In this document: piece after piece, positions 56,038 through 61,940 of the stretch | Position numbering within the stretch: position 1 is the stretch's first letter | How the letters are laid out: every line of letters begins with the position of its first letter | Assembly: GCF_006345805.1 (NCBI RefSeq) | Contig: NC_043023.1 | Coordinates: 18,786,001-18,850,000, forward strand | Reading direction: 5' to 3' | DNA length: 64,000 bases | Source: Octopus sinensis | Lineage: Eukaryota | The notes under the pieces: generated by a model | What the model was told of the DNA's origin: nothing | What the model saw: the letters and a program-made list of their open reading frames with translations, nothing else | Database searches by the model: none | Position numbers and translations under genes: made by a program

Positions 56038-59000
56038 ATGGAGATTGAATTGTGTGAGGACGAGGTTAAAGTTGAAATGCAGTCTAAAAGGACTGATTCT
56101 CTTGATGGTATAAAGACAGGAACAAGTAAAACAGCATACCATTGTGATATCTGTGGTAAATCATTCTCTGTAAGTAAAGTCTTAACCAGACACAGATGTA
56201 GTCACACAGGACAGAAACCATATCACTGTGATATCTGTGGTAAATCATTCTCTCAAAGAGATTACTTAATTGCACACGAACGTATTCATACAGGAGAGAA
56301 GCCATATCACTGTGATATCTGTGGTAAATCATTCTCTCAAAGAGATACTTAATTGCACACGAACGTATCATACAGGAGAGAAGCCATATCACTGTGATAT
56401 CTGTGGTAAATTCATTCTCTCAAAGAGATTACTTAATTGCACACGAAGTATTCATACAGGAGAGAAGCCATATCACTGTGATATCTGTGGTAAATCATTC
56501 TCTCAAAGAGATTACTTAATTGCACACGAACGTATTCATACAGGAGAGAAGCCATATCACGTGATATCTGTGGTAAATCATTCTCTCAAAGAGATTACTT
56601 AATTGCACACGAACGTATTCATACAGGAGAGAAGCCATATCACTGTGATATCTGTGGTTAAATCATTCTCTCAAAGAGATTACTTAATTGCACACGAACG
56701 TATTCATACAGGAGAGAAGCCATATCACTGTGATATCTGTGGTAAATCATTCTCTCAAAGAGATTACTTAATTGCACACGAACGTATTCATACAGGAGAG
56801 AAGCCATATCACTGTGATATCTGTGGTAATCATTCTCTCAAAGAGATTACTTAATTGCACACGACGTATTCATACAGGAGAGAAGCCATATCACTGTGAT
56901 ATCTGTGGTAAATCATTCTCTCAAAGATTACTTAATTGCACCCGAACGTATTCATACAGGACAGAAACCATATCACTGTGATATCTGTGGTAAATCATTT
57001 CTCAAAGAGATTACTTAATTGCACCACGAACGTATTCATACAGGAGAGAAGCCATATCACTGTGATATCTGTGGTAAATCATTCTCTCAAAGAGATTACT
57101 TATTGCACACGAACGTATTCATACAGGAGAGAAGCCATATCACTGTGATATCTGTGGTAAATCATTCTCTCAAAGAGATTACTTAATTGCACACGAACGT
57201 ATTCATACAGGAGAGAAGCCATATCACTGTGATATCTGTGGTAAATCATTCTCTCAAAGAGATTACTAATTGCACACGAACGTATTCATACAGGAGAGAA
57301 GCCATATCACTGTGATATCTGTGGTAATCATTCTCTCAAAGAGATTACTTAATTGCACACGAACGTATTCATACAGGAGAGAAGCCATATCACTGTGATA
57401 TCTGTGGTAAATCATTCTCTCAAAGAGATTACTTAATTGCACACGAACGTATTCATACAGGAGAGAAGCCATATCACGTGATATCTGTGGTAAATCATTC
57501 TCTCAAAGAGATTACTTAATTGCACACGAACGTATTCATACAGGACAGAACCATATCACTGTGATATTGTGGTAAATCATTCTCTCAAAGAGATTACTTA
57601 ATTGCACACGAACGTATTCATACAGGAGAGAAGCCATATCACTGTGATATCTGTGGTAAATCATTCTCTCAAAGAGATTACTTAATTGCACACGAACGAT
57701 TCATACAGGAGAGAAGCCATATCACTGTGATATCTGTGGTAAATCATTCTCTCAAGAGATTACTTAATTGCACACGAACGTATTCATACAGGAGAGAAGC
57801 CATATCACTGTGATATCGTGGTAAAATCATTCTCTCAAAGAGATTACTTAATTGCACACGAACGTATTCATACAGGAGAGAAGCCATATCACTGTGATAT
57901 CGTGGTAAAATCATTCTCTCAAAGAGATTACTTAATGCACACGAACGTATTCATACAGGAGAGAAGCCATATCACTGTGATATCTGTGGTAAATCATTCT
58001 CTCAAAGAGATTACTTAATTGCACACGAACGTATTCATACAGGAGAGAAGCCATATCACTGTGATATCTGTGTAAATCATTCTCTCAAAGAGATTACTTA
58101 ATTGCACACGAACGTATTCATACAGAGAGAGAAGCCATATCACTGTGATATCTGTGGTAAATCATTCTCTCAAAGATTACTTAATTGCACACGAACGTAT
58201 TCATACAGGAGAGAAGCCATATCACTGTGATATCTGTGGTAAATCATTCTCTCAAAGAGATTACTTAATTGCACCCGAACGTATTCATACAGGAGAAGAA
58301 GCCATATCACTGTGATATTGTGGTAAATCATTCTCTCAAAGAGATTACTTAATTGCACACGAACGTATTCATACAGGAGAGAAGCCATATCACTGTGATA
58401 TCTGTGGTAAATCATTCTCTCAAAGAGATTACTTAATTGCACACGAACGTATTCATACAGGAGAGAAGCCATATCACTGTGATATCTGGGGTAAATCATT
58501 CTCTCAAAGAGATTACTTAATTGCACACGAACGTATTCATACAGGACAGAAACCATATCACTGTGATATCTGTGGTAAATCATTCTCTCAAAGAGATTAC
58601 TTAATTGCACACGAACGTTATTCATACAGGAGAGAAGCCATATCACTGTGATATCTGTGGTAATCATTCTCTCAAAGAGATTACTTAATTGCACACGAAC
58701 GTATTCATACAGGAGAGAAGCCATATCACTGTGATATCTGTGGTAAATCATTCTCTCAAAGAGATTACTTAATTGCACACGAACGTATTCATACAGGACA
58801 GAAACCATATCACTGTGATATCTGTGGTAAATCATTCTCTCAAAGAGATTACTTAATTGCACACGAAGTATTCATACAGGAGAGAAGCCATATCACTGTG
58901 ATATCTGTGGTAAATCATTTCTCAAAGAGATTACTTAATTGCACACGAACGTATTCATACAGACAGAAAACCATATCACTGTGATATCTGTGGTAAATCA

Positions 59001-61940
59001 TTCTCTCAAAGAGATTACTTAATTGCACACGAACGTATTTACAGGAGAGAAGCCATATCACTGTGATATCTGTGGTAAATCATTCTCTCAAAGAGATTAC
59101 TTAATTGCACACGAACGTATTCATACAGGACAGAAACCATATCACTGTGATATCTGTGGTAAATCATTCTCTCAAAGAGATTACTTAATTGCACACGAAC
59201 GTATTCATACAGGAGAGAAGCCATATCACTGTGATATCTGTGGTAAATCATTCTCTCAAAGAGATTACTTAATTGCACACGAACGTATTCATACAGGAGA
59301 GAAGCCATATCACTGTGATATCTGTGGTAAATCATTCTCTCAAAGAGATTACTTAATTGCACACGAACGTATTCATACAGGAGAGAAGCCATATCACTGT
59401 GATATCTGTGGTAAATCATTCTCTCAAAGAGAACTTAATTGCACACGAACGTATTCATACAGGAGAGAAGCCATATCACTGTGATATCTGTGGTAAATCA
59501 TTCTCTCAAAGAGATTACTTAATTGCACACGAACGTATTCATACAGGAGAGAAGCCATATCACTGTGATATCTGTGGTAAATCATTCTCTCAAAGAGATT
59601 ACTTAATTGCACACGAACGTATTCATACAGGAGAGAAGCCATATCACTGTGATATCTGTGGTAAATCATTCTCTCAAAGAGATTACTTAATTGCACACGA
59701 ACGTATTCATACAGGAGAGAAGCCATATCACTGTGATATCTGTGGTAAATCATTCTCTCAAAGAGATTACTTAATTGCACACGAACGTATTCATACAGGA
59801 CAGAAACCATATCACTGTGATATCTGTGGTAAATCATTCTCTCAAAGAGATTACTTAATTGCACACGAACGTATTCATACAGGAGAGAGCCATATCACTG
59901 TGATATCTGTGGTAAATCATTCTCTCAAAGAGATTACTTAATTGCACACGAACGTATTATACAGGACAGAAACCATATCACTGTGATATCTGTGGTAAAT
60001 CATTCTCTCAAAGAGATTACTTAATTGCACACGAAGTATTCATACAGGACAGAAACCATATCACTGTGATATCTGTGGTAAATCATTCTCTCAAAGAGAT
60101 TACTTAATTGCACACGAACGTATTCATACAGGAGAGAAGCCATATCACTGTGATATCTGTGGTAAATCATTCTCTCAAAGAGATTACTTAATTGCACACG
60201 AACGTATTCATACAGGACAGAAACCATATCACTGTGATATCTGTGGTAAATCATTCTCTCAAAGAGATTACTTAATTGCACACGAACGTATTCATACAGG
60301 AGAGAAGCCATATCACTGTGATATCTGTGGTAAATCATTCTCTCAAAGAGATTACTTAATTGCACACGAACGTATTCATACAGGACAGAAACCATATCAC
60401 TGTGATATCTGTGGTAAATCATTCTCTCAAAGAGATTACTTAATTGCACACGAACGTATTCATACAGGAGAGAAGCCATATCACTGTGATATCTGTGGTA
60501 AATCATTCTCTCAAAGAGATTACTTAATTGCACACGAACGTATTCATACAGGACAGAAACCATATCACTGTGATATCTGTGGTAAATCATTCTCTCAAAG
60601 AGATTACTTAATTGCACACGAACGTATTCATACAGGAGAGAGAAGCCATATCACTGTGATATCTGTGGTAAATCATTCTCTCAAAGAGATTACTTAATTG
60701 CACACGAACGTATTCATACAGGAGAGAGAAGCCATATCACTGTGATATCTGTGGTAAATCATTCTCTCAAAGAGATACTTAATTGCACACGAACGTATTC
60801 ATACAGGAGAGAAGCCATATCACTGTGATATCTGTGGTAAATCATTCTCTCAAAGAGATTACTTAATGCACACGAACGTATTCATACAGGAGAGAAGCCA
60901 TATCACTGTGATATCTGTGGTAAATCATTCTCTCAAAGAGATTACTTAATTGCACACGAACGTATTCATACAGGAGAGAAGCCATATCACTGTGATATCT
61001 GTGGTAAATCATTCTCTCAAAGAGATTACTTAATGCACACGAACGTATTCATACAGGAGAGAAGCCATATCATTGTGATATCTGTGGTAAATCATTCTCT
61101 CAAAGAGATTACTTAATTGCACACGAACGTATTCATACAGGACAGAAACCATATCACTGTGATATCTGTGGTAAATCATTCTCTCAAAGAGATTACTTAA
61201 TTGCACACGAACGTATTCATACAGGAGAGAAGCCATATCATTGTGATATCTGTGGTAAATCATTCTCTCAAAGAGATTACTTAATTGCACACGAACGTAT
61301 TCATACAGGAGAGAAGCCATATCATTGTGATATCTGTGGTAAATCATTCTCTCAAAGAGATTACTTAATTGCACACGAACGTATTCATACAGGACAGAAA
61401 CCATATCACTGTGATATCTGTGGTAAATCATTCTCTCAAAGAGATTACTTAATTGCACACGAACGTATTCATACAGGAGAGAAGCCATATCACTGTGATA
61501 TCTGTGGTAAATCATTCTCTCAAAGAGATTACTTAATTGCACACGAACGTATTCATACAGGAGAGAAGCCATATCATTGTGATATCTGTGGTAAATCATT
61601 CTCTCAAAGAGATTACTTAATTGCACACGAACGTATTCATACAGGAGAGAAGCCATATCACTGTGATATCTGTGGTAAATCATTCTCTCAAAGAGATTAC
61701 TTAATTGCACACGAACGTATTCATACAGGAGAGAAGCCATATCATTGTGATATCTGTGGTAAATCATTCTCTCAAAGTATTCATTTAACTAGACACAGAC
61801 ATATTCATATAGGAGAGAAACTGCATGAATGTGATATCTGTGGTAGATCTTTCTCTCAAACTATTCACTTAATTGGACACACACACATATATATATCATC
61901 ATCATCATCATCATCGTTTAACGTCCGTTCTCCATGCTAG
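56038..61940 (+). CDS. Giant C2H2 zinc-finger gene or pseudogene: leader, one distinct finger, ~66 near-identical fingers, two distinct terminal fingers; many apparent frameshifts
   Basis: ATG 56038 ([15 protein letters not shown]...). The 84-bp unit [24 protein letters not shown](E/Q)KPY runs from ~56218 to ~61736, then QSIHLTRH and QTIHLIGH fingers; the frame reads into an RTE tail and stops at 61938-40. Confidence 0.7.

What the first reader, a model, noticed from the sequence alone, without database searches (positions are those of the whole stretch)
56218..61736. Zinc-finger minisatellite: ~66 fingers with one invariant recognition helix
Seen: about 5.5 kb of an 84-bp unit encoding [24 protein letters not shown](E/Q)KPY. 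Apart from scattered single-base indels, the recurrent variants are the linker (GAG AAG versus CAG AAA, the latter matching the linker of the distinct first finger) and synonymous CAC/CAT; the helix (-1 Q, +2 D, +3 Y, +6 A) is essentially invariant. The neighbouring 13-finger gene has mostly different helices. Established: each C2H2 finger reads about 3 bp, and octopus has a large C2H2 expansion. Inference: a homopolymeric array would read a tandem trinucleotide repeat over a long stretch. Gln at -1 often selects A, so (NNA)n tracts such as the (TAA)n microsatellites used here as retrotransposon targets are candidate ligands. It could be a microsatellite- or TE-sensing protein evolving by unequal crossover like the PRDM9 array, although no PR/SET or KRAB domain is visible. 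Tyr at +3 is outside the standard code, so the target prediction is weak.
Basis: partly seen in the sequence, partly recalled or inferred. Interest (0 to 1): 0.8.

Follow-up and report, generated by a model that had tools for sequence, protein, structure and literature searches.

The report
One zinc finger amplified 66 times
In an Octopus sinensis zinc-finger gene, a single finger has recently been copied 66 times in a row, giving a far more uniform finger array than any of 359 comparison proteins, but it is seen in one error-prone assembly and nothing shows that a protein is made.

Summary
Window 56224-61742 holds 66 head-to-tail 84-bp units, all encoding [24 protein letters not shown](E/Q)KPY. 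They sit inside a gene with an ATG at 56038, a 34-aa leader, a distinct first finger and two divergent last fingers.

The window is Octopus sinensis (GCA_006345805.1). The O. bimaculoides counterpart has the same leader and first finger (about 91-92% nt identity) but roughly 13 different fingers. The amplified unit matches its finger 8 at 93%. All four amino-acid differences lie at helix positions -1, +1, +2 and +3.

The array is therefore a young, lineage-specific coding minisatellite. A 168-bp Q/E dimer pattern points to unequal exchange.

As assembled, 45 indel events break the frame. The substitution:indel ratio is 4:45, against 601:53 for real divergence nearby (P about 1e-38). This fits unpolished long-read consensus error rather than mutation.

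The last finger and the native stop codon are replaced by a microsatellite and a SINE. No effector domain, annotation or translated product was found.

The proposed function as a reader of tandem triplets is plausible by analogy with synthetic poly-CAG zinc fingers, but it is untested. The array also lacks the longer linkers that those synthetic proteins need.

The parts
55991..56037 (+). Short upstream stretch conserved with the O. bimaculoides counterpart; probable 5' UTR part of the coding exon. An in-frame stop lies at 55990-55992.
   Evidence: The BLAST alignment with L001 begins at 55991/9953. Identity falls from about 91% in the leader to 76% in the 50 nt upstream and 59% over 100 nt.
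56038..56139 (+). Start codon and 34-aa N-terminal leader, [34 protein letters not shown]. The leader is shared with paralogs and matches no known domain.
   Evidence: Searches give the sequence. It is about 91% nt identical to the leader of P0002/L001. No Pfam family covers residues 1-33.
56140..56223 (+). Finger 1 ([28 protein letters not shown]), which is not part of the amplified unit.
   Evidence: It is 92% nt identical to O. bimaculoides F1 and 70-76% to the other fingers.
56224..61742 (+). 66 tandem 84-bp units encoding [24 protein letters not shown](E/Q)KPY. The stretch is 5519 nt against an ideal 5544, with 45 indel events that are denser in units 1-33.
   Evidence: The unit is 93% identical to O. 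bimaculoides F8.
61743..61826 (+). Finger 68 ([28 protein letters not shown]), a divergent finger with a non-canonical linker.
   Evidence: Its ancestral counterpart is ambiguous, at 77-81% identity to any pair of adjacent O. bimaculoides fingers.
61827..61896 (+). Finger 69 ([22 protein letters not shown]...). It lacks the second zinc-binding His because its 3' half is a (CA)n(TA)n microsatellite (about 61877-61896).
61896..62139 (.). SINE-like interspersed repeat that begins with its own (ATC)6 run. It supplies the C-terminal tail [14 protein letters not shown] and the stop codon at 61938-61940.
   Evidence: Four other copies in the window are 84-90% identical, and each is headed by (ATC)n.

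Best explanation
What it is: a real, very young, lineage-specific coding minisatellite inside an ordinary octopus-type C2H2 zinc-finger gene.

Shown:
- The ancestral gene had a short leader and about 13 different fingers, as its O. bimaculoides counterpart still has.
- In the O. sinensis lineage one finger, the ortholog of finger 8, differs only at its four DNA-contact positions (-1, +1, +2, +3) plus two silent sites.
- That single 84-bp unit now stands 66 times in tandem between finger 1 and the last two fingers. The other internal fingers are gone.

Inferred:
- The copies arose by unequal crossing-over or replication slippage. These sometimes acted in a two-unit register, which would produce the alternating Q/E linker pattern.
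- They arose within roughly the last 0.3-0.6 million years, or are still being homogenised.
- Most of the 45 frame-breaking indels are uncorrected PacBio consensus errors. Short reads cannot polish identical repeats well.
- The real locus therefore probably carries an open frame of about 1,950 aa with 69 fingers. Its last finger and native stop codon have been replaced by a microsatellite and a SINE.

Function (inference only): if translated, every finger would prefer the same triplet. Because all linkers are canonical, only short runs of about 3-6 fingers could sit in register on DNA at once. The protein would then act as a multivalent, sliding reader of a tandem 3-bp repeat with A at the 3' base of each triplet.

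My best guess is that this is a recent, possibly polymorphic expansion allele with no established function, rather than a long-selected sensor.
For: -
- The source is GCA_006345805.1, O. sinensis. PMC10700109 cites this assembly as built from PacBio reads plus Hi-C.
- Orthology: leader about 91%, F1 92% and unit-to-F8 93% nt identity, against 70-87% to non-corresponding fingers. The neighbouring gene is 91.5% identical across species.
- Unit versus F8 shows 6 nt differences. Four are non-synonymous and all fall at helix -1..+3; two are synonymous.
- The O. bimaculoides array is diverse, with 75% matches between units.
- The error signature is strong. There are 34 deletions and 11 insertions against about 4 private substitutions. 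Real divergence in the same region shows 601 substitutions to 53 gap openings, giving odds ratio 0.008 and Fisher P about 1e-38.
- Indel density falls abruptly from about 1.06 per unit (units 1-33) to 0.3 per unit (units 34-66).
- The neighbouring single-copy gene has an intact 403-aa ORF.
- The order of Q/E and C/T markers is aperiodic, which argues against an assembler looping through a collapsed repeat.
- The age bound follows from at most 4 private substitutions in 5.5 kb.
- Only C2H2 Pfam families are hit.
- A synthetic same-helix array binds poly-CAG (PMC5013590).
Against: - Everything rests on a single assembly. No reads, second individual or sister-species locus could be reached.
- Some indels look inherited rather than random. 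Adjacent units 20/21 share the compound change delT13+insA18. Adjacent units 53/54 share a +GA insertion. Identical events recur more often than chance (16 pairs observed against 7.4 expected, P about 0.014).
- Three substitutions destroy zinc ligands (His>Pro twice, Cys>Trp once).
- The 3' end is disrupted.
- The O. bimaculoides counterpart has in-frame stops after finger 11, so the gene may already have been decaying.
- No annotated gene or translated product exists for the locus.
- The gene's position and orientation differ between the two species, so strict orthology is not certain.
Confidence: 0.6

Rival explanations
1. Dead gene turned satellite. The frame breaks are real, so the locus is a zinc-finger pseudogene whose 84-bp unit expanded as an ordinary non-coding minisatellite. 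The uniform helix would then reflect youth and homogenisation rather than selection on a protein.
For: - As assembled, the ORF from the ATG stops after 104 aa, and no open stretch holds more than 9 fingers.
- Adjacent units share compound indels (20/21 and 53/54), and identical indels recur more than chance predicts (P about 0.014).
- Zinc ligands are mutated in units 9, 25 and 28.
- The last finger and native stop are lost to a microsatellite and SINE.
- The O. bimaculoides counterpart has stops after F11.
- There is no annotation and no matching product.
Against: - The substitution:indel ratio of 0.09 against 11.3 for real divergence in the same region (P about 1e-38) is very hard to obtain by mutation.
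- 30 of the 45 events are 1-bp deletions, half of them outside homopolymers, and their density changes abruptly in mid-array. That is typical of uneven long-read consensus.
- No substitution creates a stop codon in the finger frame.
Confidence: 0.25
2. A functional sensor of tandem triplet DNA. The homopolymeric protein is expressed and selected to coat a microsatellite, such as (TAA)n or the (ATC)n heads of the local SINE family, perhaps to silence or stabilise repeats.
For: - All amino-acid change relative to the ortholog sits at the DNA-contact positions.
- The only coding variation among the 66 units is E/Q in the linker, and both forms are natural linkers.
- Synthetic arrays of one repeated helix do bind poly-CAG (PMC5013590).
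- Candidate ligands lie in the window: (AAT)~122 at 10292-10653 and (ATC)4-6 on every SINE copy.
- The targets of recently expanded octopus C2H2 genes are an acknowledged open question (PMC12513265).
Against: - There is no evidence of expression and no effector domain.
- The array is so young that its uniformity says nothing about selection.
- It has canonical linkers only, whereas long synthetic arrays need extended spacers every two fingers.
- SINE heads span only 4-6 triplets, not 66.
- The 3' end is disrupted.
- No binding data exist for Tyr at +3, and no solved structure has a similar helix.
Confidence: 0.12
3. Assembly artefact in copy number. The genome holds only a few such units, and the assembler or the noisy reads inflated the array.
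For: It is seen in a single long-read assembly with many consensus errors at exactly this place. No independent copy was found.
Against: - The order of Q/E and CAT/CAC markers is aperiodic and locally structured, as expected from real molecules and not from a loop.
- At 5.5 kb the array is shorter than typical PacBio reads, so single reads should span it (general knowledge, not checked here).
- The window has no gaps (0 N).
- Unique, cross-species-conserved sequence flanks the 5' side.
Confidence: 0.06

Closest known systems
PRDM9 zinc-finger coding minisatellite (vertebrates)
   Same: It has an 84-bp unit of one finger per repeat and head-to-tail copies with very high framework identity. It turns over by unequal exchange, and between-species change is concentrated at DNA-contact residues (PMC3890296, PMC8925151; here).
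   Different: PRDM9 arrays have roughly 8-20 fingers whose helices differ from each other, and they sit behind KRAB/SSXRD/PR-SET domains. Here 66 of 69 fingers share one helix, and the only N-terminal part is a 34-aa leader with no known domain.
Octopus-lineage C2H2 zinc-finger gene expansion (Albertin et al. 2015; PMC12513265; PMC10547256)
   Same: It has the same gene architecture (short acidic leader, then fingers with TGEKP linkers in one exon). It lies in a cluster with other such genes and has a counterpart in O. bimaculoides.
   Different: Typical members have diverse helices, such as the neighbouring gene (12 distinct of 13) and the O. bimaculoides counterpart. Among 359 polydactyl proteins retrieved here, the commonest helix makes up a median 10% and at most 44% of fingers, against 96% here.
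Synthetic poly-zinc-finger proteins against trinucleotide repeats (ZF11xHunt / ZF-KOX1)
   Same: They are a chain of fingers carrying one repeated recognition helix (QRATLQR), so that every finger reads the same triplet of a tandem repeat, joined by TGEKP/TGQKP linkers (PMC5013590).
   Different: They are engineered, with 11 fingers and a fused KRAB repressor. They have longer TGSQKP spacers after every two fingers, which the authors call essential for long arrays. The octopus array is 6 times longer and has neither spacers nor an effector domain, and its binding is unknown.
KRAB-ZFP / FiNZ-type TE-targeting zinc-finger families
   Same: These are rapidly evolving, lineage-specific, clustered polydactyl genes in a TE-rich genome, and their proposed targets include satellites and non-autonomous elements (PMC10547256).
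   Different: No KRAB or FiNZ domain is present, and no target has been predicted or tested. Specificity here would be a single triplet rather than a long composite motif.

Membership tests
C2H2 zinc finger (Pfam PF00096 / PF13465) | C-X2-C-X12-H-X3-H ligand spacing in each unit | tested here: met
   The consensus unit and 36 uninterrupted fingers within the array region match the pattern. F69 fails, because its final His is replaced by Tyr.
C2H2 zinc finger (Pfam PF00096 / PF13465) | Profile match above the curated cut-off | tested here: met
   For the 300-aa in-frame stretch, PF00096 scores 212 bits (cut-off 25.2) and PF13465 scores 304 bits (cut-off 40).
Octopus-lineage C2H2 expansion | Short family-specific N-terminal leader followed directly by fingers in one open exon | tested here: met
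   The leader resembles those of the neighbour Z403 and of O. bimaculoides P0002 and P0085. An in-frame stop lies 16 codons upstream of the ATG.
Octopus-lineage C2H2 expansion | Clustered with paralogs, with a counterpart in another octopus | tested here: met
   Z403 lies 11 kb upstream and a decayed ZNF sits at about 3.0-3.7 kb. L001 of O. bimaculoides is partly syntenic.
PRDM9-type minisatellite gene | PR/SET (and KRAB/SSXRD) domain upstream of the array | tested here: not met
   Pfam finds only zinc-finger families in the ORF from the ATG. Exons further upstream were not searched exhaustively.
PRDM9-type minisatellite gene | 84-bp coding minisatellite with change focused on contact residues | tested here: met
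   The period is 84. All 4 of 4 non-synonymous differences from the ortholog lie at -1, +1, +2 and +3.
PRDM9-type minisatellite gene | Fingers within one array differ at contact residues | tested here: not met
   All 66 units have helix QRDYLIA.
KRAB-ZFP / TE-repressing ZNF | KRAB or another repressor domain | tested here: not met
KRAB-ZFP / TE-repressing ZNF | Binds a TE or satellite family | not testable with these tools
   No validated recognition model or binding data were available, and no solved structure has a similar helix.
Trinucleotide-repeat-reading poly-zinc-finger (synthetic ZFxHunt type) | One recognition helix repeated in all fingers | tested here: met
   The comparison is with PMC5013590.
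Trinucleotide-repeat-reading poly-zinc-finger (synthetic ZFxHunt type) | Extended linkers at intervals to keep long arrays in register | tested here: not met
   All 66 linkers are TGEKP or TGQKP.
Trinucleotide-repeat-reading poly-zinc-finger (synthetic ZFxHunt type) | Demonstrated binding to a tandem triplet | not testable with these tools
   This needs SELEX, B1H, PBM or ChIP experiments.
Non-coding minisatellite / processed pseudogene array | No maintained reading frame in the real DNA | tested here: inconclusive
   The frame is broken 45 times as assembled, but the break pattern has an error signature. Reads are needed to decide.

The most novel reading that the evidence does not exclude
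The locus encodes a natural homopolymeric poly-zinc-finger protein of about 69 fingers, 66 of them identical. It is expressed and binds a tandem trinucleotide repeat multivalently, for example (TAA)n tracts or the (ATC)n ends of the dominant octopus SINE family. That would make it a natural counterpart of the engineered poly-CAG zinc fingers. It would also be a new way for a genome to sense microsatellites or SINE tails, created in one evolutionary step by amplifying a finger whose contact residues had just changed.
Probability: 0.12. Interest if true: 0.85.

Novelty: new variant of a known kind. Interest (0 to 1): 0.5.

Why it matters
Zinc-finger arrays are thought to gain new specificities by shuffling and mutating different fingers. 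This locus shows the opposite extreme, caught very early. One finger changed at exactly its DNA-contact positions and then swept through the array by unequal exchange, erasing about nine other fingers.

If the frame is intact in the real DNA, this would be the most homogeneous natural polydactyl array I could find: 96% one helix, against at most 44% in 359 comparison proteins. It would also make a direct question testable: can a natural protein read a microsatellite triplet by triplet?

If the frame is broken, the locus instead shows how a coding finger unit can seed a minisatellite, and how long-read assemblies misreport such loci. Either way it is a candidate hypervariable marker between O. 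sinensis individuals and between O. sinensis and O. vulgaris.

It also shows why annotation pipelines may under-report homogeneous arrays.

Tried and rejected
- Word-index protein searches. These aimed to find annotated versions of the array, or the O. vulgaris ortholog through the neighbouring gene. The candidate cap was saturated by generic zinc fingers. The neighbour protein did not even retrieve itself, although one search shows it is in the collection. I treat the negatives as uninformative. The one useful hit was P0002, the O. bimaculoides counterpart.
- Exhaustive phmmer against 1.84 billion representatives. There were 183,777 hits and none of the top 150 exceeded 60% identity, so no long translated form of the array is in the library. 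A short product of about 300 aa or less could fall just below the listed scores.
- Exact look-up of the as-assembled 104-aa product. It is not on record. This is uninformative, because short-read assemblies would break inside the repeat.
- Gene-conversion donor for the new helix. The neighbour's finger 2 (QKDYLTT) shares Q/D/Y but uses different codons (62% identity over the helix nucleotides), so I rejected it as donor.
- Assigning fingers 68/69 to particular ancestral fingers. This stayed ambiguous at 77-81% identity to any adjacent pair, despite the 'GEKL' linker shared with F11.
- Rfam scan of 55-64 kb. Only sub-threshold hits on TA microsatellites; rejected.
- The bacterial-type promoter/terminator scan is irrelevant for an animal gene.
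- PDB sequence search for a similar helix. It returned only generic relatives (ZNF568, Aart, PRDM9) and nothing informative on Tyr at +3.
- The O. sinensis genome paper (Li et al. 2020) and Albertin et al. 2015 are not held. The polishing details are therefore inferred from the paper's title as cited in PMC10700109.
- I did not run structure prediction, because the fold is not in question.

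
Full report
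**Observation**

Tandem Repeats Finder reports a single array at 56135-61880 with an 84-bp period, 68.7 copies, 96% matches and 1% indels.

Splitting the array unit by unit and translating all three frames gives one gene on the + strand:
- an ATG at 56038;
- a 34-aa leader ([34 protein letters not shown]);
- a distinct finger 1 at 56140-56223 (helix VSKVLTR, linker TGQKP);
- 66 units from 56224 to 61742, all encoding [24 protein letters not shown](E/Q)KPY;
- a divergent finger 68 at 61743-61826;
- a finger 69, from 61827, that never reaches its last zinc-binding His.

- The two-base Q-linker (GAG AAG to CAG AAA) occurs in 14 units.
- The silent CAC>CAT change occurs in four units near the 3' end.

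The neighbouring 403-aa gene (43596-44807) has 13 fingers with 12 different helices.

- As assembled, the frame is broken by 45 indel events. The ORF from the ATG ends after 104 aa, and the longest open stretch holds 9 fingers.
- About four private substitutions exist, and three of them hit zinc ligands: His>Pro in units 9 and 25, and Cys>Trp in unit 28.
- The 3' half of finger 69 is a (CA)n(TA)n microsatellite. It is followed by a ~240-bp SINE-like repeat that begins with its own (ATC)6 run and supplies the tail [14 protein letters not shown] and the stop codon at 61938-61940.
- Four other copies of that repeat in the window are 84-90% identical, and each has the same (ATC)n head.

**Source and relatives**

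The neighbouring protein is encoded on CM016885.1 of GCA_006345805.1, the chromosome-level Octopus sinensis assembly. PMC10700109 cites that assembly as built from PacBio reads and Hi-C.

A protein search with the leader recovered P0002 from O. bimaculoides, which has almost the same leader. Its locus, L001, was fetched. L001 is partly syntenic with the window:
- The neighbouring gene is 91.5% identical.
- A UbiE-like methyltransferase gene and a further zinc-finger gene are also shared.

The counterpart of the array gene lies at L001 9953-11255. It has the leader and finger 1, followed by about 13 different fingers (75% matches between units).

Its position and orientation relative to the neighbour differ between the two species. 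The two genes may therefore be co-orthologs within a rearranging cluster rather than strict positional orthologs.

**Origin of the array**

At the DNA level:
- Window finger 1 matches O. bimaculoides finger 1 at 92%, against 70-76% to the other fingers.
- The amplified unit matches finger 8 at 93%, against 75-87% to the others.

These values equal the orthologous divergence seen in the neighbouring gene.

The unit differs from finger 8 at six nucleotides. Two are silent. The other four change helix positions -1, +1, +2 and +3, from HKHS to QRDY. The rest of the finger is identical at the protein level.

So one finger, changed at its DNA-contact residues, was amplified and replaced the other internal fingers.

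Units 43-53 alternate Q and E linkers, a 168-bp dimer. The CAT variant clusters in units 59-65. Both patterns are what unequal exchange or slippage produces.

With at most four private substitutions in 5.5 kb, and a rate derived from the 34-My split of the two species, the copies coalesce within about 0.3-0.6 My. That is later than the 2.5-My O. sinensis / O. vulgaris split quoted in PMC10700109. This date is an inference with wide error.

**Are the frame breaks real?**

Among the units there are 34 deletions and 11 insertions, 30 of them single-base deletions. Half of those single-base deletions lie outside homopolymers. Against these 45 indels there are only about four substitutions.

In 6.5 kb of real O. 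sinensis / O. bimaculoides alignments from this same region I counted 601 substitutions and 53 gap openings, a ratio of 11.3:1. The array's ratio is 0.09:1, giving an odds ratio of 0.008 and Fisher P of about 1e-38.

Indel density also drops abruptly, from about 1.06 per unit in units 1-33 to 0.3 per unit in units 34-66. The single-copy neighbouring gene is intact.

This is the signature of uncorrected long-read consensus error in a repeat that short reads cannot polish.

There are caveats. Two pairs of adjacent units share the same compound or 2-bp indel (20/21 and 53/54). Identical events also recur more often than a random model predicts, with 16 pairs observed against 7.4 expected (P about 0.014). 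A minority of the indels may therefore be real, or the errors may be context-specific.

I put about 0.6-0.7 on the frame being essentially open in the real DNA.

**Is the array itself real?**

- The order of markers is aperiodic.
- The window has no gaps.
- The 5' flank is unique and conserved across species.
- At 5.5 kb the array is within the span of single PacBio reads; this last point is general knowledge, not checked here.

I consider gross inflation of copy number unlikely (about 0.06).

**How unusual is it?**

An exhaustive profile search of 1.84 billion representative proteins returned 183,777 relatives, some with up to 77 canonical fingers. Nothing in the top 150 exceeded 60% identity to the array.

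Across the 359 retrieved proteins with at least 8 fingers, the commonest helix accounts for a median 10% and at most 44% of fingers. Here it is 66 of 69, or 96%.

This sample holds only annotated or predicted proteins. Homogeneous arrays are exactly what assemblies and gene callers handle badly, so they may be under-reported.

**Function**

- Pfam finds only C2H2 families, and no KRAB, SCAN, BTB or PR/SET domain.
- No annotation covers the 21 kb fetched around the neighbouring gene other than that gene itself, although that stretch stops about 1.2 kb short of the array.
- The as-assembled product is not on record.
- Expression could not be checked.

If a protein is made, every finger should prefer the same triplet. 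By the canonical recognition model (established knowledge), Gln at -1 favours A at the 3' base. Tyr at +3 and Ala at +6 are not predictive, and no solved structure has a similar helix.

The closest working analogue is synthetic. ZF11xHunt uses one repeated helix to bind poly-CAG, but it needs TGSQKP spacers after every two fingers, which its authors call essential for long arrays (PMC5013590).

The octopus array has only TGEKP and TGQKP linkers. All 66 fingers therefore could not lie in register on about 198 bp of DNA. Short runs engaging a repeat multivalently is the most one can infer.

Possible ligands in the window include (AAT)~122 at 10292-10653 and the (ATC)4-6 heads of the SINE copies. 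This is speculation.

The literature treats the targets of recently expanded octopus C2H2 genes as an open question (PMC12513265). It proposes TEs and satellites as general targets of such families (PMC10547256).

**Verdict**

The finding is a real and unusual structure. It is a very young amplification of one zinc finger within a member of the octopus C2H2 expansion, and it evolves as PRDM9-type coding minisatellites do. It is a new variant of a known kind.

The proposed function is untested and faces a structural objection from the linkers. The coding status depends on whether the indels are assembly errors, which the evidence favours but cannot prove.

Interest is moderate (0.5). It would rise sharply if accurate reads show an open frame and a transcript exists.

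Noticed in passing
window 1477-1694, 14835-15071 (-), 50342-50584, 53464-53703, 61896-62139: Five copies of a ~240-bp SINE-like repeat at 84-90% identity. On the strand shown, each begins with (ATC)4-6 followed by GTTTAACGTCCG. One copy truncates the array gene.
   Followed up: partly
window 4004-4227, 13801-14022, 15360-15575, 19360-19574, 20152-20358, 24755-24974, 36228-36432, 41421-41640, 54502-54710, 55301-55504, 63625-63843 (= L001 12754-12978): A second ~220-bp interspersed repeat has at least 11 copies in 64 kb, at about 88-91% identity to the O. bimaculoides copy. One copy lies about 530 bp upstream of the array gene's ATG.
   Followed up: no
window 10292-10653; 50621-51581; 46779-47181: Large simple repeats: (AAT)~122, (AT)~488, and a C/T-rich low-complexity block with GC skew of about -0.55.
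   Followed up: no
window ~3024-3700 (+): A decayed zinc-finger gene with stop codons inside its fingers. It is syntenic with an intact 462-aa zinc-finger gene of O. bimaculoides (L001 28982-30370).
   Followed up: partly
window 7469-13482 (-) = L001 20966-24100: Exons of a UbiE/COQ5-like methyltransferase gene, 82-86% identical to the O. bimaculoides gene. It anchors the synteny between the two species.
   Followed up: partly
window 36454-61940 versus L001 1769-11255: The array gene lies on the opposite side of the neighbouring gene, and in the opposite relative orientation, compared with O. bimaculoides. In L001 the gene and the adjacent conserved block are on one gap-free stretch, so this looks like a real local rearrangement or an inverted duplication followed by loss.
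   Followed up: partly
window 56038-56139 and 43596-43697; P0002, P0085: Members of this octopus zinc-finger family share an acidic N-terminal leader of about 34 aa (ME.E.C/S E....K.E.....D...D..K...K..Y). It matches no Pfam family and could be a family-specific effector or localisation motif.
   Followed up: partly
L001 11020-11100 (O. bimaculoides): The O. bimaculoides counterpart has in-frame stops after finger 11 (GEKL*DQ**SVF*), with two more fingers beyond them. The public gene model (P0002, 224 aa) instead splices between fingers and into DNA 10 kb downstream, which looks like an annotation artefact.
   Followed up: no
window 43782-43865: Finger 2 of the neighbouring gene has helix QKDYLTT, with the same Gln -1 / Asp +2 / Tyr +3 combination as the amplified finger but different codons. 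The combination recurs in this family.
   Followed up: yes
window 58170-58862 (-), 60021-60617 (-), 61030-61767 (-): One antisense frame of the 84-bp unit has no stop codon, which gives long minus-strand ORFs across the array. This is expected by chance for a 28-codon unit (about 0.26 per frame) and is not evidence of a gene.
   Followed up: yes
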